From contig NC_068994.1 of assembly GCF_001194135.2 (NCBI RefSeq), positions 26,210,883 through 26,243,499 on the forward strand: a DNA stretch of 32,617 bases. The letters are read 5' to 3'. Positions 4,761 through 31,874 of this stretch are shown piece by piece (positions within the stretch are counted from its first letter, which is position 1; each line of letters starts with the position of its first letter). The notes beneath the pieces were generated by a model. The model was given only the letters and a program-made list of their open reading frames with translations, was not told where the DNA came from and searched no databases. The stretch comes from Octopus bimaculoides (Eukaryota). The position numbers were made by a program, and so were the translations under genes.

Positions 4761-4866
4761 ATCATCATCGTCATCATCATCATCATCGTCTTCTTCTTCT
4801 TCTTCTTCTTCTTCTTCTTCTTCTTCTTCTTCTTCTTCTTCTTCTTCTTCTTCTTCTTCTTCTTCT
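4761..4866. repeat. Compound (CAT)n-(CTT)n microsatellite
   Basis: Direct reading; source of the poly-S/F/E/D ORFs. Confidence 0.95.
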
Positions 4867-5831
4867 GTTATTGTCATTATCGTTGCCTTAATGAGGACAA
4901 ATATGATTGATCATCATGACAATGATCTACATTGCCATTCTCACTCCCATGGTCACTATGATTATCACTGCTATCATATTAGGATAATGATGATCCTCAT
5001 CGTTGTTGTCATTGTTGCTACCATCTTCATCATCCTCATAATTTAAATATTCCTAAAGATGACAGGTGCAATCATAAACAATTAGCACCATTATTTCTCT
5101 TCCTTTGCAGTGGCAGTCACTTAGGGTCTCTGCAAAGGAATCAAATCTACTGGATATTCATTCACGGTTGTGCTCCCACTTTTCATAAGTTTTGTGGAAG
5201 CAATATTGTTTACTTGTCATCACCAAAATTTGTGACTGAATTTGACATCCCCTAGCTATCCCTAATCCTTCTGTGGAATCCATTCATTCTTCATCTCAAC
5301 AGATTAGAAGTGTTATGTCAATCCATACCATTGCATTAGGTTCTGTTATATCACCCCTCACTTCTTTCTCTATATTAATAATCTTCTTGTTACTCTAATT
5401 AACAACACACACTTCTATGGCCATGTTACAATACTTTTACTCCTTCTTAGCCTTCTATACACAGGTAAGTCAAGCATGTAACCTAAACCCATGTTTTGAT
5501 CTACACTCTGAGTCCACAAAGGTTAAACCTTAGAATCTCCTTCGTTTGGGATATGACACAACCTTGTTACTTTCAACAGTACTTAGACGTGAACACAATA
5601 CATGTAATATATGAAGTAATAAATTTTCTATTTCACCTTTGGTTATCAAACTCATAAAAGTAAAACCCTTAAAATCACTATAAATGTTTCTCACCACATC
5701 AGATGATCTCTGTGATGACCATACATATCTAAAATTGGCAAGCAATTGCATTACAATGATTATCGTACCTCTTTAGAGCCAGAAAAACACACACACACAC
5801 TAATATGTTTATTTATATATGTGAGTGTATG

Positions 5832-8859: not shown

Positions 8860-10110
8860 AACACTTCCTTGTGCTAAAACACTTCCTTCTTGCACCATAA
8901 CACTTCATTGACCTTCGGCCAGCCTGATACCTCCACACTTTGTTGACCAAACTTGTCCTCTTCCTCAACTGCTTCTCGTTTGCGGAGGAATTTTACCAAC
9001 ATTTCTCAGGAGTAGCCATGGGAACGAGAATGGGCCGCAACTATGTGAACCTGTTTGTTGGCTATGTTGAGGCCCAATATACTCTCACTATTCAATGGTC
9101 CCACTACTGAGCTATGTGGTTGCTATATTGATGACTGTATCGGCGTGACCTCACTCTCCGTGAACATCTTGACTCCTTCCTCTCCTCTGTCAAATCCTTC
9201 CAGCCTGCCCTTGAATTCTCTTGCTCTGTCTCTAACTCTTCCGTCGAATTTTTTGACATTTTTGTCAACATACACCACCCCGCTCGCACCACCTCCATCT
9301 ACTACAAACACACTGACTCATGCTTCTACCTTAACTTCTCCTCCTCCTACTCTACCCACACCAAACTCCCCATCCCCTACTCCCAATTCCTCCATCTACG
9401 TAGGCTCTGCAGTGACGACCATGACTTTGTGACCCAGTCTCAACTCACCATTATCCACACTGCCCTTGCCCAGGCACAACCTGTAGACCGTGACTCTGCT
9501 CTTTCTCCTCGCACCCACCCCACCTTACCTGTCTCTAGTTTCCCCTCACCTACTACCCCTCCAATGCATCATTCTCCGAGCCTTCTGGTGACTCCAATCC
9601 AACCCCTCCACCTCACACATCTCCCCTAACCTACTCCTCTTCTTCAAACGAGCCCATAACCTGCGTGACCTCCTGGTCCACAGTTTCTTCTCTACCCCTG
9701 CCTCCCAGCCTGGCTCCTTCCCCTGCTCTCAACCATACTGTCACACCTGCCTCTACCTCTCCATCACGCCACCGACTCCAGCACCTATACTAATGTTATT
9801 TACAGCATCTCCTGATCTCTCTGTCCTTTCCTATTCATTGGTCAAATGGGACTCCGCTTTGCTGACTGGTTCGTGGAGCACGTCTGAGACATCAGACTTG
9901 GCAATGATACCCAGGTCTCGCACCACTTCTGCTCTACTGGTCATTCCCTACATGTCTGTGTTCGGACTGTCTCTGCACAGGTGCCACTCCACATACATTA
10001 GCACTGACCACTTCTCAGCACCCACACCACACACCTTCACTGTGAACAGGAATGAATTTTCTCTCTTCGTTCCTTTGCACCTTATGGGTTCAACTTACTA
10101 CCTCTCTTCA
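8860..10110 (+). mobile_element. PLE remnant of a second lineage: RT core to GIY-YIG endonuclease, disabled
   Basis: Manual translation: LVLFLNCFSF..FYQHFSGVAMGTRMG..YVNLFVGYVE, then CYIDDCIG (catalytic YIDD), TSIYYKHTDS..IPYSQFLHLRRLCSDD, FKRAHNLRDLLVHS, GSFPCSQPYCHTC, NVIYSIS*SLCPFLFIGQMG..FVEHV*DIR, IFSLRSFAPYGFN. Frameshifts and internal deletions are present. Neptune-like assignment is tentative. Confidence 0.9.
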
Positions 10111-10149
10111 TCTGACACCAACCCCACACAGATTCCCGCATGCCTTCTT

Positions 10150-11110
10150 CATTAAACTGCCTCTCTCCTCCACATACACACCTCATACTACCTGCCTTGG
10201 TACTCTCACTACACACACACCACTATACAAATATCCATACACACTGTTCAATATATTACTAACTTCACACAACATTACACCTACACCTACAAACACCTTC
10301 CCACTCCACACACCATTATCCACACATTCACACACCATTATCCATACGACCACAGACACTCTTCAATAGTGTTACCACACATACAACTATACGAGCAGCC
10401 CAACACACTGTTTAAACTCAATACATACACCACACACCATCAAGCACACTACCACATCCATACAAGCACATAATACCTGAAAACAGACAATATATACACA
10501 TACACACAACACACATAGACACAGATAATTTTTGCTCACAAAATACACCATACACATGTACAAGCACACATTAACTGCTACAAACAACACACACACACGT
10601 CTATACGTTAGCACGCCGGGCGAAATGCTTAACGGTAATTCGTCTGCCGCTACGTTTCATCCTTTCGGGGTCGATTAAATAAGTACCAGTTACGCACTGG
10701 GGTCGGTATTATCGACTTAATCCGTTTGTCTGTCCTTGTTTGTCCCCTCTGTGTGTAGCCCCTTGTGGGTAGTAAAGAAATAACACACGTCTATACGTGC
10801 GCGTGCGCACGCACACACAAAACGCACGTCACTCCACACAACACATACACTAGGTTACTTGTAGACATACACACACACAGGCCCATGCGTTTGCACACAT
10901 ACATGATAACCCCACACATACATACACATGTCCACATGCACACACATATACCTACCAGTACATGGAATACATATTGCTCCACATAATGTACACACTGGGT
11001 TACTTGTACACATACACACACACAGGTTCACATAATTTTCAACTTGCCCACACATACATATTCACACACTCACCCCCATTCACACACACACACACCATTC
11101 TCACATATAC
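10150..11110. repeat. Degenerate CA-rich low-complexity region hosting a SINE insertion
   Basis: Direct reading. Confidence 0.75.
10605..10782 (+). mobile_element. SINE family 1 copy: 5'-truncated, B-box deleted, alternative 3' tail, 16-bp TSD
   Basis: ACACACGTCTATACGT at 10593-10608 and 10783-10798. Aligns to the 1376-1594 copy except for a ~35-nt internal deletion and a different tail. Confidence 0.9.
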
Positions 11111-14130: not shown

Positions 14131-14664
14131 ATGGCAGCAAAGATAAGGATCAGCAGTGATGTCATCAGACTTTTCTATGGCGAAGGTGACATAGTAGCCT
14201 GGATTCGAAAAGTCAAAGTTGTGGCCAGGCTAGAAGACATTGAAGATGTGGCAGGCCTCATGGCCCTGTATTTGGAGGGGAGTGCACTAGCACTGTACCT
14301 CGAAATGGATGAAGAAGAACTACTGAGCACAGTGAAAATCGAGCAGTGCTTGAGAGAGGCTTACACAGATGGAGAGTATACCACTTTTGCTAAGCTGGGA
14401 ATGATCAGATGGAGAGGGGAACAGGTTGATGAATACGCTGCAGAGGTATGGAAGCTGGTTGTGTTGTCTGGTCTTAATGGTGAGGGACTTGACAAAGCCT
14501 TTGTAAATGGCTTTCCCGATGACGTGTCGGTGTGGCTACAACAGTTGCCAGGTGGCAACAAAATGGCAATGAGCAAGCTCATCATACAAGCCCACATGTT
14601 GACACAAAACACCGGGCAGAAGGCAGTAGTGATGGCAGTTTCAGATGCCTGCAATGCTGCATGA
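14131..14664 (+). CDS. gag: Retrotransposon Gag-like protein, C-terminally truncated (177 aa)
   Basis: FYGEGDIVAWIRKVKVVARL..ALYLEGSALALY..WRGEQVDEYA..AFVNGFPD resembles Ty3/Gypsy gag capsid-region motifs. No CCHC knuckle before the stop. Confidence 0.7.
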   Translation: MAAKIRISSDVIRLFYGEGDIVAWIRKVKVVARLEDIEDVAGLMALYLEGSALALYLEMDEEELLSTVKIEQCLREAYTDGEYTTFAKLGMIRWRGEQVDEYAAEVWKLVVLSGLNGEGLDKAFVNGFPDDVSVWLQQLPGGNKMAMSKLIIQAHMLTQNTGQKAVVMAVSDACNAA

Positions 14665-19944: not shown

Positions 19945-20809
19945 CGTATGTTTACTCATATGTTTACATCTGAAAGCTCTATATGTGATTTTATTAACTA
20001 GGTCACCCTTAGAGAAAAGTATGAAATACAATTCTAAATTACAGAGGGAACAAAAATCTTTGCCCTTGTCGTAAGGAAATTATTTTCCTATAATTGACCA
20101 TTCTAAAGAATACTCCTTATTTTGGTCTTTAAGTTGCCAAATTAATCTACTAAGCACCATGCTATTTTGTTTCTTTCTATCTCTAAATGTTGAATAATGG
20201 TTCGATATTCTTTTCGAAATTTCGAGCGAAGACGATCCAATATAAACCCTAATTTCATTTTTGGTTAATACATTACACTGATATACAGTATCTTTAGCTT
20301 TAGCATTTACACTTGGGAATTTAATTCTATTAGGATTTAGTTCTGATATTACTATTTTGTTGGTTGTTATTATTAATAATATTGGTATTATTATTTTTGT
20401 TAACTTTTAAATTATCTATAACTGTGTCACCTGGAAAATTAAGATTATTACTTATATTTATATTATTTGACTCTTCAATAAAATTAGAGCTTAATAGTTT
20501 CACGTTATGGGCGGCGATAATTTGTGTTAAATTCTTGGTATTTGAAAAGCCAAATCTGACCTTATGTGCGTTTATGATTTTGTAGTAATGCGAGTTTTTG
20601 GGAAAATTCCTACTAACTACATTCCTGAACAGGGTAACTAAGTTCGACTTAATTTGTTTACCAAATGGAATAACGAACCATAAATTATCCTCATTTTTGG
20701 TTTTATAACCATTACTACTATTCCTAAAGAATTTTATTCTACCTCTGTTAGGATTGGATTCATGTCTAGGGTATTGTGGTTTATCTCTATTCTTTCTTAC
20801 GATGTTAAT
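19945..20809 (-). mobile_element. AT-rich PLE remnant: linker and GIY-YIG endonuclease
   Basis: ORF track gives LWFVIPFGKQIKSNL..YYKIINAHKVRFGFSNTKNLTQIIAAHN. Manual extension gives DTVYQCNV..RVYIGSSS..RISNHYSTF..LSRLIWQLKD..LEWSII..CSLCNLE..CKH. Confidence 0.92.
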
Positions 20810-21375
20810 ATTATTATTATTTAGTGAGAGAGCAGTGCATGCCATCAAAGTGACACTGGGGTAAAATATACGAAGCCCATTATACCCATCATGACTACCT
20901 GTCTGACAAGGGTACACCAGGCACATGCATCACAGCCATATGTGTGCGACATGGTGATCTCATATCAAGATAAACAGCCCATGACCTTGCAGGTGGGGCC
21001 CAGTTAGAATTTTTTTCAGGTCGAGTAGCCCATCCCGCTCAAAAGGTCTCTGAATAAAGTTCGTTTAAGGATGTTGAGCAAAACACCCATGTTTCCAAAG
21101 GTGAACTATTCAAACCCCAAAGAATTCCTCTCAACACATGACTATGATGCTCCCCCACTACTTCTGTTCATGATCAGAGATGCACATATCGTCAGCCACC
21201 AAGGGACATGCTCAACTGGTTAAGGTTAAACAACTGACAAGCAAATCTGTGGTATTAAGCAGAATATTTGCTGTAGCCCATCTTTTATACCAAGACAAAA
21301 CAATGTACATGATAACACTTCCAATCAGTTAAAATCAGAAGCCATGAGAAGCACTGCTTGGTACTGCATCCGGGC
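20810..21375 (-). mobile_element. ~560-bp non-coding retroposon with (TAA)n tail, inserted in the PLE Asn tract
   Basis: Abrupt GC-richer segment bounded by (AAT)n on both sides; PLE-like coding resumes beyond it. Family not named with certainty. Confidence 0.65.
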
Positions 21376-21569: not shown

Positions 21570-22539
21570 ATTTACCATGAGAACTACAATGAAAAAATAT
21601 GACAAGGATATGGTATACAATTTTTTTGTGCGGGAGTTTATTGAGACATGTAATTTATTTATTTTCAGGGTTACGCAAGGGTAAAAAGGTTGAGAAACAC
21701 CGATATAGACAAATAGTGCTAAAAAGCACTGATTATATCAACAGATGAATTTCATCTTCAATATATCTTCACATCAACAATAATTGACAACTACACACTG
21801 AATGCTTGACTGAATTACTCATTACAAAGACTGCTTAAGTCACTAATAGGTAATTTATATTCAGGCTGTCAGCTTTTTGCAGCACCACTGACTGTTTAGT
21901 CAGTGTTAAAATATATCAGCTTGGCAAGATTTTGGTGTAGCATTTGATGTTTAGGTGTCTATTGCTTATGATGCAAAAATACACTGAAATCATGTGATGC
22001 TATTGTCCTTACACTGGGGCTGACAAAAATCATCCACCAATGTAATCTGAGCTTTTTAGCTCTATTTGTCTATACAAGATGATTTCTTAGGACAATAACT
22101 GCAGTTTATGGCATTTACACAGCTCAACCAAGTTAAGTAGGATGTGTAAATTAATTATATATATCAAAAGGCTTTGTTATAATACTATTCCACAGCTATA
22201 CCAACAATCCAATAATGCTAATCGACAGATACAAAAACAGCCATACCAGCAATCCAACATATCTCCTGGGCAGTACCATACAATAAGATATTGTAATACT
22301 ATATTAATATATTAAGATATATTAAATACATTATAATATAGGTGGTTATAGTAATTAAAACCAAAAAGGGAAAATTAATAAATGAGGGTGAAAAATAGCA
22401 CCTATAATTGCTAGAAATGAGAGCTAAAATTTAACTCGAACAGCAACACAAAAGCACTAACCTCATGAAATATTTGGGACTGTGAGCAGCAAGCTACATC
22501 TTTCATTGGCGAGCTACACTAGCAGAATGAAGTAGTTTG

Positions 22540-23450
22540 ATAAAACATTATCTCCTGAAGAGGATCTGGAAAAGGAGAGAGTGCCAGAAGACTGGAAGAA
22601 AGGACACCTTGGTAAAACTGCTTAAGAAAGGGGACCTGTCATCCTACAATAACTGGAGGGAAATCATGCTACTATCCATCGCAGAGAAAGTATTGATGAA
22701 AATTATCCCTGAGAGATTGAAGACCGCCTTGAACAAGACACTTCAGGATGAACAAGCAGACTTCCATCAAGATAGATCCTACACAGACTACATCACAACA
22801 ATGTGGATTATCATCGAGCAGTCCCTAGAGTGGCAGGCTCCCTTATACACAGTCTTGTCGACTTTCAGAAGACTTTTGATAGTGTCAACAGAGATGTCAT
22901 CTGGAAACTGATGTACTATTACGGCTTCTCACAGAAGTTCATCATCATCATACAACAGCCATATGAAGATGTCACCTGTCAAGTCATCCACAGCAGGAAA
23001 CTGATGGAACTCTTCATTGTGCAAACCGGCGTCTGACAAGGTTGTTTGCTTTCACTGACGATCTTCCTGATGGTGGTTAACTGGATCATGAGACAAGCCA
23101 CAGCAGGCAAGAGATAAGGCTTCCAGTGGACCTTTGAGAAACAATTGGAAGACCTAAACTATGCAGACGACATCAGTCTTCTCTCCCGCAAGCAGCAACA
23201 TGCACAGGAGAAGTTATGTTGTGTTGCAGAAGCGGAAAGGACTGGCCTCCAGATCAACATTAAGAAGACAGAGGTCATGAGAGTGAACAACAGACAGCAA
23301 GACCCAGTGCAACTACACCAGAAGAATATCAAGGATGTAGACAGGTTTGTTTACCTGGGCAGTGTTGTCAGTAAAGATGGAAGGGACAGATGAGGACATT
23401 AAATGCTGAATAAACAAATCCTGACATGCCTTCAACACCTTGCGACCAAT
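22540..23450 (+). mobile_element. RTE-clade LINE reverse transcriptase fragment, disabled
   Basis: KKGDLSSYNNWREIMLLS, EQADF..DRSYTDYI, VDFQKTFDSVNR, GV*QGCLLS..F, LNYADDISLLS, INIKKTEVM, FVYLGSVV. Confidence 0.95.
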
Positions 23451-23452
23451 CT

Positions 23453-25200
23453 TATGATGAAGTTAATGTAGTTAAAATGGCTAGGAAATCGTTGATTAAA
23501 TATAATAATAAACTGTGAGCTAGGAAGTATACTAGGGACTATTTTGATATACCAATGGGGGCAACCGATTCAACACAGGTAACTGATTTAGTAGGTATAT
23601 ATTTATTATCAAAACTTCAATTGGAAAACTTAAAATTGGAGGGTGGTTTATATAGGGATGACCTTTTATTACTAACTAAGGATTGCACCAATAAAACACT
23701 AGAATTATTTAAGAAGAAACTATATAGTTTTTTTTTAAAGAAATGGATTAACGATTACTATATATAATGAGAACTATGATGTTAATTATTTAGATGCTAA
23801 TTTTAATTTAATAACAGGTAAAACCCAACCATTGCATAAAATTAATGAAAACATTAGATATATTAATGCTAATAGTAATCATTCACCTTCAATTAAGAAA
23901 TTGTTGACATATAATATAGGTAAGAGAATATCGTTACTTTCTTCTAATTTTGAGATTTTCTAAAACTTTAATAATTCTTTAATAATTCGAAATATAATTA
24001 TAATATCAAAGATTATAATATTAATAATCTATTTATTTTCTGTAATAATAAACATAACATTAAGAATTATGATAAGGTCTGCTTGGGTAATAATGGTAAG
24101 AATAATATGTATTATGATAATAAAGAACATAAACATAATTATAATGGACAAAATAATAAGATTAAATTTAATTCATTTAATGATAATAATAAATTTAATA
24201 ATATAAATAATAAATATAATAATATCAATAATAAGAACAAAATTAGGCTAATTATTCCTTACGGCGTTCAAGTTAAAACTAACATTATTAAAGAGATTTT
24301 AAATCTAATTGATATATTCCTTAGAGATAATAAAAAAATATAATAATATTTTTTCTAGTAATAATTTGGGAGTTGGTTATTCTACTACTAATAATGTTGG
24401 TAACATTATTTCTTCTTTTAATAAATTTAAGTTAAATAAGTTTTACAAATATAAATTAAACGCTTATTCTAATAATAATAATAAGGACAAGGATATAATT
24501 AATTGTACATGTAGAGATAAGACCAAATGTAAATTTAATAATAAATGTGATTTGAAGGATGTGGTGTATAAATGTATAGTGACTTTAATTGATGGGAATA
24601 AATTTAATGGTTATAATTTAAATAAGATTTACATAGGCGCGGGAGTGGCTGTGTGGTAAGTACCTTGCTTACCAACCACATGGNNNNNNNNNNAAGTGTC
24701 TTCTACTATAGCCTCGGGCCGACCAAAGCCTTGTGAGTGGATTTGGTAGACGGAAACTGAAAGAAGCCCGTCGTATATGTGTATATATGTATGTGTGTGT
24801 GTATGTCTGTGTTTGTCCCCCCCAACATCGCTTGACAACCGATGCTGGTGTGTTTACGTCCCCGTAACTTAGCGGTTCGGCAAAAGAGACCGATAGAATA
24901 AGTACTAGGCTTCCAAAGAATAAGTCCTGGGGTCGATTTGTTCGACTAAAAGTGGTACTCCAGCATGGCCACAGTCAAATGACTGAAACAAGTAAAAGAG
25001 TAAAGAGTATAGGATCGACTTCGAATAAAATTAGATTATGTGTGGCTTAACACACGAATTCCTTTAAGAATAGAAATTTGTGTTGTATTCAGTATAAGAT
25101 TAGACTGTAAATGAGAAATGAGCTATCTGTATTTACACAACAATAATATTATTCAAATATATAATTTTTTTGAAGTTTTGCATATTTGAAATGTTCTATG
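23453..25200 (+). mobile_element. AT-rich PLE remnant: RT core to GIY-YIG, interrupted by a SINE
   Basis: FDIPMGATDSTQVTDLVGIYLL..GGLYRDD (catalytic), LIIPYGVQVKTNI, YSTTNNVGNIISSFN, CTCRDKTKCKFNNKC..VVYKC..KIYIG/STSNKIR. 3' boundary approximate. Confidence 0.9.
24636..25008 (+). mobile_element. tRNA-headed SINE, family 2, full length
   Basis: Head GGCGCGGGAGTGGCTGTGTGG (A-box-like); body matches 8435-8822; candidate TSD ATAGG at 24633-24637 and 25009-25013. Confidence 0.92.
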
Positions 25201-28780: not shown

Positions 28781-29225
28781 TATACCATAAAAACACATGT
28801 AACTTATGCCCTTTATTCTGCAAGAATAAAAATAAACTTTAGTGGGTGCATAAATTATATGAGTAGATTGTTTCCAGAATTTTTTTGAATTTTTTTTGTT
28901 GAAAAAGGATGTACAAAACGTAAACATTCATACTGGAAGTTGACTCATTTAATGACAGAATGGGTTTTTACAGATAAAATAATGGCTTAAATATAATGAA
29001 GGAGACTTTTATTCATGTTGGAGGGTATAATGCTTACTTTTTCTGTATAAATTTACTAAAACTATTAAATGGTTAACTACTTTTTGAAGTCTGATGTTCA
29101 TGCTGGTAAACACGGTCTGGGCCATATTTTTCATTGCTTGGAGTTTCTACCTATCGCAATGGAGCACCATTGACATAGTGATATGGATATTTCTAACTGA
29201 AAAAATGTAATGATATAGATAATCT

Positions 29226-29535
29226 TACATTTCTAAATCTCTCAGAGAGATTTATGCAGTAGCAGCACGATAAAGTGATAGTATGTTGTCAACTTAATGT
29301 GACAGTCCCATGAAAGGGAAGAATACTGCTATTATTTAGCCCTAGGAAAAACACCGTTTCCTGTTGGACTTGACACATTTCCTGTGTCCTTATGTTTTCA
29401 AAGTGAAGATAAGCACCTCCACCCAGCAAAGCCAGCATCCCAGAGACTAGTTTCAAAGTCACATTAAGTTGACAACATTCAATCACTTTATCGTGCTGCT
29501 ACTGCATAAACCTCTCTGAGAGATCTAGAAATGTA
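29226..29535. repeat. Inverted repeat: 78-bp arms (74/78 identical) around a 154-bp spacer
   Basis: Arms 29226-29303 and 29458-29535. Confidence 0.95.
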
Positions 29536-29874
29536 TTATTTCTCTTTTCAAAAATCAGTGAATATATTTCACTTGAAATATATGTTTTCAAAGGCGGATA
29601 GGCATTGACAGCTAGCAAAGCCACGCCTTTTACATCTGCGACATGTTGTCTTCAGTTTGTTACTTGCAGTATGTGAGTTCCTTTCCTGTTCTGTTTATTG
29701 AAAATTTGTGTTATTTGAAGTGAAATATTTAAATTGAAATTGAACTGTTGTCCTTTGAAAAATGGTCGCCCTGTTGGGTAGAAAAATTTCTGTAATTTTG
29801 AGAACTGTGATTTTTACAAAAATATTTTCTGGAGATTTTCTTGTCATTTGTGAAAAGGGTGAAGAAACGAAGTT

Positions 29875-31205
29875 ATGGAGACCCAACCAGCCATCAGCTA
29901 TGCTGCAACAACGGGAAGAGGTATGAATAACAACGTTTTGCAGGTTAAAGAAGGGAAATTCGACGAGAGGAGACTGAAAAAGGAGAATGAATAGTTAAGG
30001 AAGGAAGTAGCCTGAGGCTGACCCCACCAAAAGAGGTAATGGAGGAAACAGCAAAAAAAAAAACAAAAAAACTGTTGTGTATAGAACGCTACCAAACTCA
30101 AGCAAAAGGGTGAAAATAGCAACCATTGAAGCAATGGAGAAGTGTCTTAAGGATATCAAGCACCTTACCACTTACTACACCAGAGGCAAGAAGTACGGCA
30201 CAGTGGAAGTTCGGTTTGCAACCAAACAGGATGCAATAAAGTGCTCCACATGAGGTTGGAAGAATGGGCACTTCTGCCAACCTACTGTGGCAAACGTGTG
30301 GCCAGAATTAGAATTGGCAGATTCAAACGTGGCTGGTAACAACCATCCTCTTCAATGCGGAGGAGAAGACCAATATGCTGAAGGTAATGAGGACAACACA
30401 GGTAAACTGGTTTGGATACGGCCTTGAGGTGACAGTCCAAATCAGTTTGCCAGACCTGCATAAAATTGTTGACGAAATTATGTTGTAAGAGGATGTTAAA
30501 TTAAGAGAGGTAGTGGAGGGAAGACCTCCCATCTGCTACCACTGTGGAATATGGGGACACATGCAAGCAAGGTGTCCCCAGAAACAAGAAGTAGAACAGG
30601 AGCAGCAGTAGGAGGAGGTGGAACAAGAAGTGGTAGCACAAAGCCAAATAAGTGAAGAGAAGGAAAACGTAGAAGAAAAATACTCAGTTGGTAAAAGGAA
30701 AAAGAAAAGAGATGAAAATGCATATTCACCACCAAAAAAACTGCAAAAAAAGAGAAAAGGCAACTTAGAGGAGATACAAATTGAAAGAACAGAAATAACA
30801 AAAAAGAAAATTACAGAAGTATGCAGAAAGAAAAGGAAACAACAATAAAGAGTAAGAGTGAGATAGAGATGGTTGAGACACAAAAACCAGGAACGTCAGG
30901 AGAGAATAGAGATGGGAAATGGGAAGGAGTAGCGAAAGGAAAAAAATGCGAGGATGATGATAGAATATAAAAAGAGCATAGAAATAGAGAAGTGGATCAC
31001 TAAATTGAAAAACGTAATCAGAGTGAAATTGTCAGGGATGGAGCATACCGAAGACGGCAGGGCAGTTTTGCTAGAGAGAGAGAAAATAGAAAGATTAAAA
31101 GAATTGTTTGGTGAACAAATTGTATTATCGGAGTTGTGGATATGATGCGATGAACTACTACCAGTAGTGCCATTTGAAGACATAGTGCAGTACTTAGTCA
31201 ATTGA
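29875..31205 (+). pseudogene. Decayed gag/ORF1-like nucleic-acid-binding protein with CCHC zinc knuckle
   Basis: METQPAISYAATT start; RGKKYGTVEVRFAT (RRM-like, tentative); LLPTYCGKRVARIRIG; VVEGRPPICYHCGIWGHMQARC (CX2CX4HX4C at 30534-30575); K/E-rich tail. Several stops and frameshifts; no RT or endonuclease follows. Confidence 0.8.
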
Positions 31206-31453
31206 AAGTAAGTGGAATTTGTAAAATTAAAATGTTTTAAAAATGGAAGAACAATGAACTGTTCATGAATATGTGTTGCATAAACAGTTAAATGACACTA
31301 CCTGCGTTTGGGGCACAGGTAAGAGAGTTCATTTTTCATTATATCATTATATTCATATTCATTCGATTTATGTTTTATGTACCCCACTGTATTGTGTTGT
31401 CTGTCTTTGTTCATTCCTTCTTTGTAAGAGCCAATGTGCTCATAATAAAGAAT

Positions 31454-31527
31454 AAAGCCAGCAAGCCATGTTACTCCAGACTGATGATGAGCAATGACTC
31501 TGAAACTAGTCTCTGGATGCTGGATTT
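31454..31527 (+). ncRNA. Minimal type I hammerhead ribozyme motif
   Basis: TCCAGA-CTGATGA-TGAGCAATGACTCT-GAAAC-TA-GT-C-TCTGGA. Helix I 6 bp perfect, extended past an 11-nt bulge by AAAGCCAGCA/TGCTGGATTT (9/10). Palindromic helix III ACTAGT. Predicted cleavage after C31511. Helix II is weak (GAG/CTC with a T.T at its base). Confidence 0.8.
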
Positions 31528-31684
31528 GCTGGGTGGAGGTGCTTATCTTCACTTTGAAAACATAAGGACACAGGAAATGTGTCAAGTCCAACAGGAAACG
31601 GTGTTTCCTAGGGCTAAATAACAGTAAAATTCTTCCCTTTCATGGGACTGTCACATTAAGTTGGCAACATACTATCACTTTATG

Positions 31685-31874
31685 GATAATCTTGATTGTA
31701 TGTTTTTATTTTTGTCCGTTTATTACTAGGCACAGTTTTAAGTTTGTCATACTGTTTACACCAATTTTGAACATTGGCGTCATTAACATTAAAATACCTT
31801 CTGGCAGCTCTACTGTCATGTTCAAATGCATATTCAACATACTTAATTTCCCCTTCGCAGTAAATGATCCACAA
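31685..31874 (-). mobile_element. pogo/Tigger-like transposase N-terminal (Brinker-type HTH) fragment
   Basis: KYVEYAFEHDSRAARRYFNVNDANVQNWCKQYDKLK resembles the pogo-family DNA-binding domain; no TIR confirmed. Confidence 0.65.

What the first reader, a model, noticed from the sequence alone, without database searches (positions are those of the whole stretch)
29226..31683. Hammerhead-bearing, gag-only retroelement with Penelope-like terminal architecture
Seen in sequence: the plus strand reads rc(B)-rc(A) | B - 5' region - one ~440-codon decayed ORF with a CCHC knuckle - two AATAAA (31444, 31451) - hammerhead - A - first 34 nt of B. No RT, endonuclease or integrase sequence was found inside. 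Established: PLEs carry minimal hammerheads in their pseudo-LTRs and often insert as partial tandems with an inverted 5'-truncated copy. They normally encode RT plus GIY-YIG, whereas CCHC ORF1/gag proteins are typical of LINE and LTR elements. Inference: this may be a non-autonomous family that pairs a PLE/retrozyme-type ribozyme terminus with a LINE-like ORF1 and is mobilised in trans, plausibly by the PLEs abundant in this window. I cannot establish novelty without a database search.
Basis: partly seen in the sequence, partly recalled or inferred. Interest (0 to 1): 0.85.

Follow-up and report, generated by a model that had tools for sequence, protein, structure and literature searches.

The report
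Gag-only ribozyme-bearing octopus retroelement
This is a dead copy of an octopus jumping gene that has the repeat ends and self-cutting RNA motif of Penelope-like elements but carries only a LINE-type RNA-binding "gag" gene and no copying enzyme. It must therefore have been moved by another element's enzymes, a combination I did not find described in the papers I could search.

Summary
Window 29227-31684 is one insertion flanked by a 9-bp target duplication (GATAATCTT). It consists of an inverted 5'-truncated copy, then a direct copy. The direct copy holds a 5'UTR, a roughly 443-codon decayed ORF, two AATAAA signals, a type-I hammerhead motif, a structured non-coding region and a 34-nt tail. 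No RT, endonuclease or integrase is present.

The same composite sits at an unrelated locus in Octopus sinensis (84% identity). A diverged relative with a homologous pseudo-LTR and hammerhead sits in O. bimaculoides. The hammerhead helices covary between the two lineages.

The ORF is a two-RRM plus CCHC protein, the Jockey-like ORF1p architecture of LINEs. A distant homologue in marine-metagenome contigs is ORF1 of an APE-type LINE. About 1,000 relatives were found; all those carrying a source name are from octopods, and none of the ten longest has RT or EN.

Best reading: a non-autonomous, PLE-type retroelement family built from a retrozyme-like 331-nt module plus a LINE-type ORF1 cassette, moved in trans. 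No autonomous partner was found, and Repbase/Dfam could not be searched. I rate it a new variant of known kinds, of moderate interest.

The parts
29218..29226 (.). Left copy of the 9-bp target-site duplication, GATAATCTT
   Evidence: Read. An identical 9-mer lies at 31685-31693, immediately outside both element ends.
29227..29461 (-). Inverted 5'-truncated copy. It holds the reverse complement of the hammerhead 3' half, region A and the first ~80 nt of B.
   Evidence: 96.1% identical (9 mismatches in 232) to the direct sequence 31495-31683 + 29492-29537. It overlaps the direct copy by 4 nt (GTCA, 29458-29461).
29458..29537 (+). Region B, the start of the direct copy. Its first 34 nt recur as the 3' tail.
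   Evidence: family D1, pair I2.
29538..29874 (+). 5'UTR. It holds the 3' strand of a long-range stem (about 29580-29625), which includes the motif AGCTAGCAAAGCCA (29610-29623), and a conserved 5'-splice-site-like GTGAGT (29673-29678).
29875..31205 (+). Decayed ORF of about 443 codons: N-terminal region, RRM1 (about 30071-30250), RRM2 (about 30250-30485), CCHC knuckle (30534-30575), a K/E-rich linker and a conserved C-terminal domain (30954-31202). Lesions: at least 4 frameshifts (near 30000, 30060, 30250, 30325) and premature stops at 29992, 30486, 30609, 30846, 30864, 30930 and 31143.
   Evidence: coordinates; zf-CCHC; tandem-RRM fold of the relative P0005; LINE ORF1 homology.
31206..31474 (+). 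3'UTR with AATAAA at 31444-31449 and 31451-31456, and a second copy of the short motif (AGCCAGCAAGCCATG, 31456-31470)
   Evidence: The 3'UTR is conserved in L001, L002 and L009.
31475..31517 (+). Type-I hammerhead ribozyme motif. Helix I has 6 bp, helix II has 3 bp plus a U.U, and helix III has 1 bp with the palindromic loop CUAG. Predicted cleavage falls between 31511 and 31512.
   Evidence: Not detected by Rfam.
31518..31649 (+). Region A, the structured non-coding part of the pseudo-LTR. It holds conserved hairpins and the 5' strand of the long-range stem (about 31518-31560).
31650..31683 (+). 34-nt 3' tail (the first 34 nt of B repeated), followed by one unmatched G at 31684
   Evidence: D1, 91%. 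The L001 copy ends at the same point.
31685..31693 (.). Right copy of the 9-bp target-site duplication, GATAATCTT
   Evidence: Read.

Best explanation
The region is a dead copy of a non-autonomous retroelement family of octopods. The family joins two modules.

(i) A retrozyme-like non-coding module of about 331 nt. It holds a type-I hammerhead, followed by a highly structured RNA domain that a ~42-bp long-range stem closes. This module forms the pseudo-LTRs.

(ii) A cassette made of a 5'UTR, a LINE-type (Jockey-like) ORF1 and a 3'UTR with poly(A) signals. The ORF1 has two RRMs, a CCHC knuckle and a C-terminal domain.

Shown: the anatomy; the 9-bp TSD; the same composite at an unrelated locus in a second species; a diverged family with homologous pLTR and hammerhead; covariation in the hammerhead helices and in the long stem; the tandem-RRM fold; homology to the ORF1 of an APE-type LINE; and the absence of RT or EN.

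Inferred: over-length or circular transcripts carrying the module are recognised in trans by the RT/GIY-YIG protein of an autonomous Penelope-like element. That protein cuts both target strands and starts reverse transcription at two internal sites in B (about nt 34 and nt 80). This would produce the direct copy with its 34-nt tail, the head-to-head inverted truncated copy, and the short TSD.

Also inferred: the hammerhead, acting as a dimer through its ACUAGU palindrome, trims multimeric RNA to unit length. The ORF1 protein, when intact, would package or chaperone the RNA.

This copy inserted roughly 5-10 million years ago and now encodes nothing functional.
For: Architecture and TSD.

Second full copy: L001 5094-7325 matches window 29463-31683 at 84%. 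It has a complete 5' pLTR (4901-5122), its own inverted fragment (4773-4900) and non-homologous flanks.

Diverged family: in L002 the ORF is ~70-73% identical and the pLTR 65-74%. It has the same order of parts and a hammerhead at the same position.

Hammerhead: it occurs in 1 of 300 shuffles. Five of 11 pairs show compensatory changes, and 82% of cells pair against 22-58% when the partners are slid. Its helix sizes and palindromic loop fit the canonical metazoan type-I hammerhead (PMC4209133).

Non-coding module: 331 nt, 38% GC, folding z-score -3.5. The conserved long stem has 6 compensatory pairs. Animal retrozymes are ~170-400 nt, low-GC and highly self-paired (PMC7229834), and are proposed to derive from PLE pLTRs (bioRxiv 10.64898/2026.07.22.740005).

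ORF: the AF2 model has pLDDT 80, and its PDB matches are tandem-RRM proteins. Jockey-like ORF1p is defined as RRM(s) plus CCHC (PMC3905857). BLASTP against the LINE ORF1 P0155 gives E 2e-17. That ORF1 is followed by an APE-domain ORF2.

No RT or EN. None of the 10 longest family hits has RT or EN.

PLE precedents: pLTR-ORF-pLTR plus an inverted pLTR, a 9-bp TSD and a 31-bp tail, and a host gene moved in trans between pLTRs (PMC3846280). Both target strands are cut and extended, with internal RT initiation that explains the tail (PMC11167929). A 30-40-bp tail and an inverted 5'-truncated copy are typical (PMC8557442).
Against: No autonomous PLE sharing this pLTR was found, because eukaryotic genomes could not be searched by DNA.

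Only three loci, representing two lineages, support the linkage, so the covariation rests on very few independent sequences.

Rfam does not call the hammerhead. Every copy seen carries a defect: U.U at positions 10.1-11.1 in the window; A9>C in one L001 copy; loss of the helix I 5' strand in the other L001 copy; G5>A in L002. Self-cleavage is untested.

The poly(A) signals lie just upstream of the hammerhead, so a normally polyadenylated mRNA would lack the module at its 3' end. A 65-nt fragment in L001 ends at that poly(A)-site region and has a 16-17-bp TSD, which could point to LINE-type mobilisation of some transcripts.

The in-window PLE remnants are unconfirmed.
Confidence: 0.7

Rival explanations
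1. It is an internal-deletion derivative of an as yet unsampled autonomous octopod PLE that natively has two ORFs: a gag-like ORF1, then RT-GIY-YIG. On this view the ORF1 is a PLE gene rather than a LINE-derived cassette.
For: A PLE with a 3' hammerhead and an upstream zf-CCHC gag-like ORF exists (Chlamys-2_cBra, PMC8557442). Non-autonomous PLE derivatives that keep their pLTRs are known from the same paper. I could not survey octopus PLEs.
Against: In three loci the ORF is followed by a conserved ~260-nt 3'UTR with AATAAA, and then directly by the hammerhead. No RT or EN remnant is present. None of the 10 longest of ~1,000 homologues has RT or EN. The only homologue seen next to a polymerase gene is a LINE ORF1.
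Confidence: 0.15
2. It is a LINE-derived ORF1-only element of the HAL1 or HeT-A kind, moved by a LINE ORF2 protein. The hammerhead-bearing region would be just UTR sequence.
For: The ORF1 is homologous to a LINE ORF1. ORF1-only non-autonomous LINE derivatives are known: HAL1 (PMC5753468) and HeT-A (PMC5537684). A 65-nt fragment in L001 ends near the poly(A) site and has a 16-17-bp TSD.
Against: There is no poly(A) or simple-repeat tail at either full copy. Partial-tandem pLTRs, a head-to-head inverted truncated copy, a 34-nt tail shared by two loci, and tandem arrays are PLE signatures, not LINE signatures. No LINE ORF2 homologue lies near any octopod copy.
Confidence: 0.1
3. It is a one-off nesting or an assembly artefact: an ORF1 fragment that landed inside a retrozyme or PLE repeat, or a mis-joined inverted repeat.
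For: The window is a gapped draft assembly containing runs of N. PLE tandem and inverted structures are known to confuse assemblies (PMC8557442).
Against: The same junctions occur in another species' assembly at an unrelated locus. A clean 9-bp TSD brackets the whole structure. The pLTR and the ORF have diverged by similar amounts between families, which argues for long-term linkage.
Confidence: 0.03

Closest known systems
Penelope-like elements (canonical EN+ PLEs such as Penelope/Poseidon and A. vaga Pen2a)
   Same: Partial-tandem pseudo-LTRs, an inverted 5'-truncated copy joined head-to-head with short overlap, a 30-40-nt tail, a short TSD (9 bp in Pen2a) and a hammerhead in the pLTR (PMC8557442, PMC3846280, PMC4209133, PMC11167929).
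   Different: It has no RT and no GIY-YIG endonuclease. Instead it carries a LINE-type RRM-RRM-CCHC ORF with its own 3'UTR and poly(A) signals.
Animal (non-LTR) retrozymes
   Same: A type-I hammerhead with 6-bp helix I, ~4-bp helix II and 1-bp helix III capped by a palindromic loop. The non-coding module is ~331 nt, 38% GC and strongly self-paired. Both are non-autonomous and both are presumed to depend on PLEs (PMC7229834; bioRxiv 10.64898/2026.07.22.740005).
   Different: Retrozymes are ~170-400-nt non-coding tandem repeats. Here the unit is 2,192 nt and carries a protein-coding cassette. No long tandem array of the module alone was seen.
PLE pLTR-mediated capture of a foreign gene (NRPS gene between Pen3a pLTRs in Adineta vaga)
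   Same: A gene unrelated to PLE enzymes sits between two direct pLTRs and one inverted pLTR, with an 8-bp TSD, and was moved in trans (PMC3846280).
   Different: That case is a single captured host gene. Here the cargo is a retroelement ORF1 and the composite forms diverged families in several octopod species.
ORF1-only non-autonomous LINE derivatives (mammalian HAL1, Drosophila HeT-A)
   Same: They encode only the ORF1/Gag-like RNA-binding protein and rely on an RT supplied in trans (PMC5753468, PMC5537684).
   Different: Those keep LINE-type ends and LINE-type mobilisation. This element has PLE-type ends and a hammerhead.
Chlamys-2_cBra (a PLE of Chara braunii)
   Same: It combines a canonical 3' hammerhead with an upstream gag-like zf-CCHC ORF (PMC8557442).
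   Different: It is autonomous, with RT and N-terminal EN, and comes from a green alga. Homology between the two ORFs was not tested.

Membership tests
Penelope-like element (autonomous) | Telomerase-like reverse transcriptase ORF | tested here: not met
   No RT Pfam hit in the three forward frames of 29227-31684. The unit is only 2,192 nt.
Penelope-like element (autonomous) | GIY-YIG endonuclease | tested here: not met
   no hit.
Penelope-like element (insertion architecture) | Pseudo-LTRs from a partial tandem, an adjacent inverted 5'-truncated copy, a 30-40-bp tail and a short TSD | tested here: met
   L001 has both pLTRs. The window copy has the 3' pLTR, the inverted copy, a 34-nt tail and a 9-bp TSD. 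Criteria are taken from PMC8557442 and PMC3846280.
Penelope-like element / retrozyme | Hammerhead ribozyme motif in the terminal repeat | tested here: met
   Core CUGAUGA...GAAA with helices I-III at 31475-31517. It occurs in 1 of 300 shuffles and covaries with the L002 copy. Catalysis was not tested.
Rfam Hammerhead_1 (RF00163) | Score at or above the family gathering threshold | tested here: not met
   No hammerhead match at gathering score or at E<=10.
Animal non-LTR retrozyme | Short (~170-400 nt) non-coding unit in tandem repeats | tested here: not met
   The unit is 2,192 nt and holds an ORF. The non-coding module alone is 331 nt but was not seen as its own tandem array.
Animal non-LTR retrozyme | Expression as unit-length circular RNA | not testable with these tools
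   No RNA data were available.
Jockey-like LINE ORF1p | [quoted passage not shown] | tested here: met
   The model of the relative P0005 shows two beta-alpha-beta-beta-alpha-beta units with tandem-RRM PDB matches. The CCHC is at 30534-30575. The definition is from PMC3905857.
LINE (non-LTR retrotransposon) | An ORF2 with APE or RLE endonuclease plus RT downstream of ORF1, and a poly(A) or repeat 3' tail | tested here: not met
   Absent in the window, L001 and L002. Present only in the distant relative L010/L013.
HAL1/HeT-A-type ORF1-only LINE derivative | ORF1 only, with LINE-type termini | tested here: inconclusive
   The ORF1-only condition is met. The termini are PLE-type rather than LINE-type. 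One short L001 fragment has a LINE-like TSD.

The most novel reading that the evidence does not exclude
Octopods may harbour a previously undescribed class of chimeric retroelements. In it, a retrozyme-like hammerhead module, dependent on PLE enzymes, has stably acquired a LINE-type ORF1p gene. The result would be a non-autonomous element that brings its own RNA-packaging protein while borrowing RT/EN from a different retroelement class. Head-to-tail arrays of different gag cassettes would arise by template switching at a short conserved motif, which doubles as one strand of a structural stem.
Probability: 0.4. Interest if true: 0.7.

Novelty: new variant of a known kind. Interest (0 to 1): 0.55.

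Why it matters
If the family is as inferred, it shows modular exchange between three retroelement kinds: PLE ends, a retrozyme-like ribozyme domain and a LINE ORF1.

It also gives a natural test of two open questions. The first is what hammerheads and pLTR RNA structures do in PLE-type retrotransposition. The second is whether an ORF1p-type chaperone can serve an RT from another element class.

It matters for annotation as well. About 1,000 homologous ORF fragments exist, and the ones carrying a source name are all octopod. Several are currently labelled as host genes, for example 'eukaryotic translation initiation factor 3 subunit J-A-like' and 'EPM2A-interacting 1-like', or are fused to WD40, LDL-receptor or C2H2 gene models.

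The copy in the window is itself inert.

Tried and rejected
- Rfam, at gathering score and at E<=10, gave no hammerhead. I therefore wrote a descriptor scan with shuffle controls.
- The third, broad-profile homologous-protein search was swamped by low-complexity words and returned only 2 proteins. This cost me the chance to fetch more chromosomal loci or to search for an octopus PLE RT.
- Short Logan contigs carrying relatives (L003-L008, L011-L012, L014-L018) showed no A/B pLTR homology and no hammerhead.
- A hammerhead-like hit in L009 (588-645) has no RT or EN nearby and was dropped as uninformative.
- Pfam and PDB searches of the putative in-window PLE remnants were negative.
- An exact look-up of a window ORF, meant to identify the source assembly, found nothing.
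- My first BLAST tables mixed L001 and L002 hits, because both records sat in one file. One search corrects this.
- A consensus-frame count of stops failed after the first frameshift. Lesions were instead located from tblastn frames and the frame translations.
- No supplementary TE libraries were available as text.
Full report
**Source and context.** The window is a draft eukaryotic sequence: AT-rich, full of microsatellites and interrupted by runs of N. The closest proteins to the ORF come from Octopus sinensis and O. bimaculoides, so the source is an octopus genome.

**Observation.**
- Arms 29349-29440 and 31515-31606 are 92 nt long and 99% complementary.
- Arms 29221-29303/29458-29540 and 29270-29352/31601-31683 are 83 nt long and 93% complementary.
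- 29458-29491 recurs directly at 31650-31683, 2,192 nt downstream.

Reading the ends adds a perfect 9-bp direct repeat, GATAATCTT, at 29218-29226 and 31685-31693. The inverted partial copy and the direct copy therefore belong to one insertion, 29227-31684.

The inverted copy is 96.1% identical to the corresponding direct sequence, with 9 mismatches in 232 positions. The two copies overlap head-to-head by 4 nt.

The two AATAAA signals are at 31444 and 31451.

**Hammerhead.** Rfam gives no hammerhead, at gathering score or at E<=10. A descriptor scan finds exactly one motif in the window, at 31475-31517. It reads UCCAGA / CUGAUGA / UGAG-CAAUGA-CUCU / GAAA / CUAG / UC / UCUGGA.
- Its geometry is a 6-bp helix I, a ~4-bp helix II and a 1-bp helix III capped by a 4-nt palindromic loop. 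This matches the canonical metazoan type-I hammerhead, which is thought to act as a dimer (PMC4209133). A15.1-CUAG-U16.1 forms the 6-nt palindrome ACUAGU.
- A motif of this quality occurs in 1 of 300 dinucleotide-preserving shuffles of the window.
- In the diverged O. bimaculoides relative (L002 8581-8625) the motif sits at the same position. There helix I is UCUGUG/CACAGA and helix II is GGG/CCC.
- Five of 11 pairs carry compensatory changes. 82% of cells pair, against 22-58% when the partners are slid.
- Every copy has one lesion: U.U at 10.1-11.1 in the window, A9>C and a lost helix I strand in the two L001 copies, and G5>A in L002. The element was therefore selected as a hammerhead, but the present copies are probably inactive.

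**ORF.** tblastn with relatives places the ORF at 29875-31205 in four frame segments.
- It has at least 4 frameshifts, and premature stops at 29992, 30486, 30609, 30846, 30864, 30930 and 31143.
- The only Pfam match in the three forward frames is a weak zf-CCHC at 30534-30575. No RT, endonuclease or integrase is found.
- An AlphaFold2 model of the intact 294-aa relative P0005 has mean pLDDT 80, above 90 in the core. It shows two beta-alpha-beta-beta-alpha-beta units followed by the knuckle.
- All significant PDB matches are tandem-RRM proteins, including IMP3 RRM12, NONO and hnRNP A1 UP1.
- One or two RRMs immediately followed by CCHC knuckles defines Jockey-like LINE ORF1p (PMC3905857).
- A further ~85-residue C-terminal domain (30954-31202) is shared with the O. 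bimaculoides protein P0006. Its function is unknown.

**Relatives of the ORF.** A profile search of 1.8 billion representative proteins gives 1,008 hits at E<=1e-3 and 410 at E<=1e-10.
- The hits that carry a source name are all octopod: O. vulgaris, O. sinensis, O. bimaculoides and Argonauta hians.
- None of the ten longest has an RT or EN domain. Their extra WD40, LDL-receptor and C2H2 domains look like chimeric gene models.
- One distant homologue, P0155/P0158, shares 29% identity over RRM1-RRM2-CCHC (BLASTP E 2e-17). It lies on two marine-metagenome contigs.
- On those contigs it is directly followed by an ORF with a complete Exo_endo_phos (APE) domain and the start of an RT. It is preceded by an ORF with zf-RVT. 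That is ORF1 of an APE-type LINE, so the cassette is LINE-type by both architecture and homology.

**Other loci.**
- L001 (O. sinensis, in an intron of a Wtap-like gene) holds a full copy. L001 5094-7325 matches window 29463-31683 at 84% overall, 89.7% in the ORF.
- L001 also has a complete 5' pLTR carrying the hammerhead (4901-5122) and its own inverted fragment (4773-4900). Its 3' end point (...CACTTTAT) and its inverted-copy end point (...GAAATG) are the same as in the window, but its flanks are unrelated.
- I saw no disabling lesion shared by the window and L001 ORFs.
- L002 (O. bimaculoides) is a head-to-tail array of three mutually divergent gag cassettes. They share about 35% amino-acid identity with each other; the middle one is the window's homologue at ~70-73% nucleotide identity.
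- The L002 array is bounded by a 5'-truncated and a 3' pLTR that are homologous to A/B at 65-74% identity.
- ORF and hammerhead terminus are thus linked at three loci, in two diverged lineages and at least two species. Between the lineages the ORF and the pLTR have diverged by similar amounts. This argues for long-standing linkage rather than a one-off nesting.

**Non-coding module.** A short motif occurs twice: in the 5'UTR (AGCTAGCAAAGCCA, 29610) and between the poly(A) signals and the hammerhead (AGCCAGCAAGCCATG, 31456). In L002 the equivalent motif, CTCTAGCCGAACAAT, marks every cassette boundary.
- The sequence between the two motif copies, taken in tandem or circular order, is 331 nt with 38% GC. 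It folds far better than shuffles, with z = -3.5.
- RNAalifold on the window, L001 and L002 predicts a ~42-bp long-range stem. It joins the segment just after the hammerhead (about 31518-31560) to 5'UTR 29580-29625, which includes the motif. Six pairs are compensatory, and internal hairpins are conserved.
- In size, composition, self-pairing and ribozyme type, this module resembles an animal retrozyme monomer (PMC7229834). Retrozymes have recently been argued to derive from PLE pLTRs.

**Mechanism.** The insertion signature is that of PLEs: direct pLTRs from an over-length copy, a head-to-head inverted 5'-truncated copy with microhomology, a 30-40-bp tail and a short TSD (PMC8557442).
- Pen2a of Adineta vaga has the same layout, with a 9-bp TSD and a 31-bp tail.
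- In the same genome a host NRPS gene lying between Pen3a pLTRs was moved in trans (PMC3846280).
- A purified PLE protein cuts and extends both target strands. It starts reverse transcription at two adjacent internal RNA sites, which explains the tail (PMC11167929).
- Here the direct copy ends at B nt 34 and the inverted copy at B nt ~80, in both the window and L001.

I therefore infer mobilisation in trans by a PLE RT/EN that recognises the module. The template would be a tandem or circular RNA, and the hammerhead would trim multimers. This step is inferred, not shown. No partner PLE was identified, and the RT/GIY-YIG-like remnants I read in the window were not confirmed by Pfam or PDB searches.

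**Age.** The window's arms differ by 3.9%, the L001 pLTRs by 7.8% and the L002 pLTRs by 11.3%. Published octopus calibrations put Jukes-Cantor distance 0.09 at about 25 My and 0.2 at about 56 My from consensus (PMC13282606). On that scale the insertions are of the order of 5, 11 and 16 My old. These figures are rough, because gene conversion between arms is possible.

The window ORF carries more lesions than ~2% divergence per arm would predict. The copy may therefore already have been defective when it inserted, which would fit ORF function being dispensable in cis. That is a weak inference from small numbers.

**Comparison and novelty.**
- Gag-only non-autonomous retroelements are known (HAL1, HeT-A).
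- Non-autonomous PLE derivatives and foreign genes carried between pLTRs are known.
- One autonomous algal PLE combines a hammerhead with a zf-CCHC ORF.
- Full-text searches found no paper describing a retrozyme- or PLE-type hammerhead element that carries a LINE-type ORF1 and no polymerase.
- Repbase and Dfam could not be consulted.

I rate it a new variant of known kinds. It is interesting to transposon specialists, while the window copy itself is an inert relic.

Noticed in passing
L002 4120-8850 (O. bimaculoides CM046603:68018009-68030449): A head-to-tail array of three mutually divergent gag cassettes (~35% amino-acid identity) lies inside one pair of pLTRs. The cassettes are joined at 'AATAAAGA + 4-6 nt + CTCTAGCCGAACAAT' with no hammerhead between them. 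L011 also shows two gag units in tandem. This suggests template switching or recombination at the short motif.
   Followed up: partly
L001 7970-8050: A ~65-nt fragment of the element's 3'UTR end (...AATAAAGAATAAAGCTAGCAAAG) stops just before the hammerhead core. It has no A-tail and is flanked by a 16-17-bp direct repeat (ACTTGAACTTGCACCAA). It could be a severely 5'-truncated retro-copy made from a transcript that ended at the poly(A) site.
   Followed up: partly
window 29673-29678; also L001, L002 and L003 5'UTRs (alignment A7): A 5'-splice-site-like (G)TGAGT is the best-conserved block of the 5'UTR, even in the distant relative L003. A possible acceptor lies near 29860 in the window. A retained 5'UTR intron is a known PLE peculiarity. 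No RNA evidence was available.
   Followed up: partly
window 9049-10152 (+), 23519-24656 (+), 20083-20929 (-): Translations read like RT-thumb plus Cys-motif plus GIY-YIG remnants (YIDD; 'Y.K.TD..YL..SSHP'; 'CxC...VVYKC...YIG'). The last two are in inverted orientation around a LINE-type RT fragment (22531-23390, YADD). Pfam and PDB sequence searches gave no support.
   Followed up: partly
window 14131-14664 (+): An intact 177-aa ORF in a GC-richer patch looks like an LTR-retrotransposon Gag N-terminus. It has no Pfam hit, and no exact match is on record in the gene collection.
   Followed up: partly
L003-L008 (Logan contigs from SRR11869384-94): An intact 294-aa relative (P0005), which lacks the C-terminal domain, is assembled identically in six sequencing runs of an unidentified species. 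It could be an active element or a domesticated gene there.
   Followed up: no
L010 and L013 (ENA marine-metagenome contigs): An APE-type LINE has an unusually long 861-aa ORF1. Only residues ~295-487 match the RRM-RRM-CCHC core, and the rest has no Pfam domain. The host organism is unknown.
   Followed up: partly
Proteins P0004, P0020, P0045, P0040, P0035: Public gene models label fragments of this gag family as host genes ('eIF3 subunit J-A-like', 'EPM2A-interacting 1-like') or fuse them to WD40, LDL-receptor or C2H2 zinc-finger genes. These are probably annotation artefacts.
   Followed up: partly
L009 588-645: An isolated hammerhead-like motif with a CGCG palindromic loop and a long helix II region has no nearby RT, EN or gag. 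It may be a chance match or a stray retrozyme fragment.
   Followed up: partly
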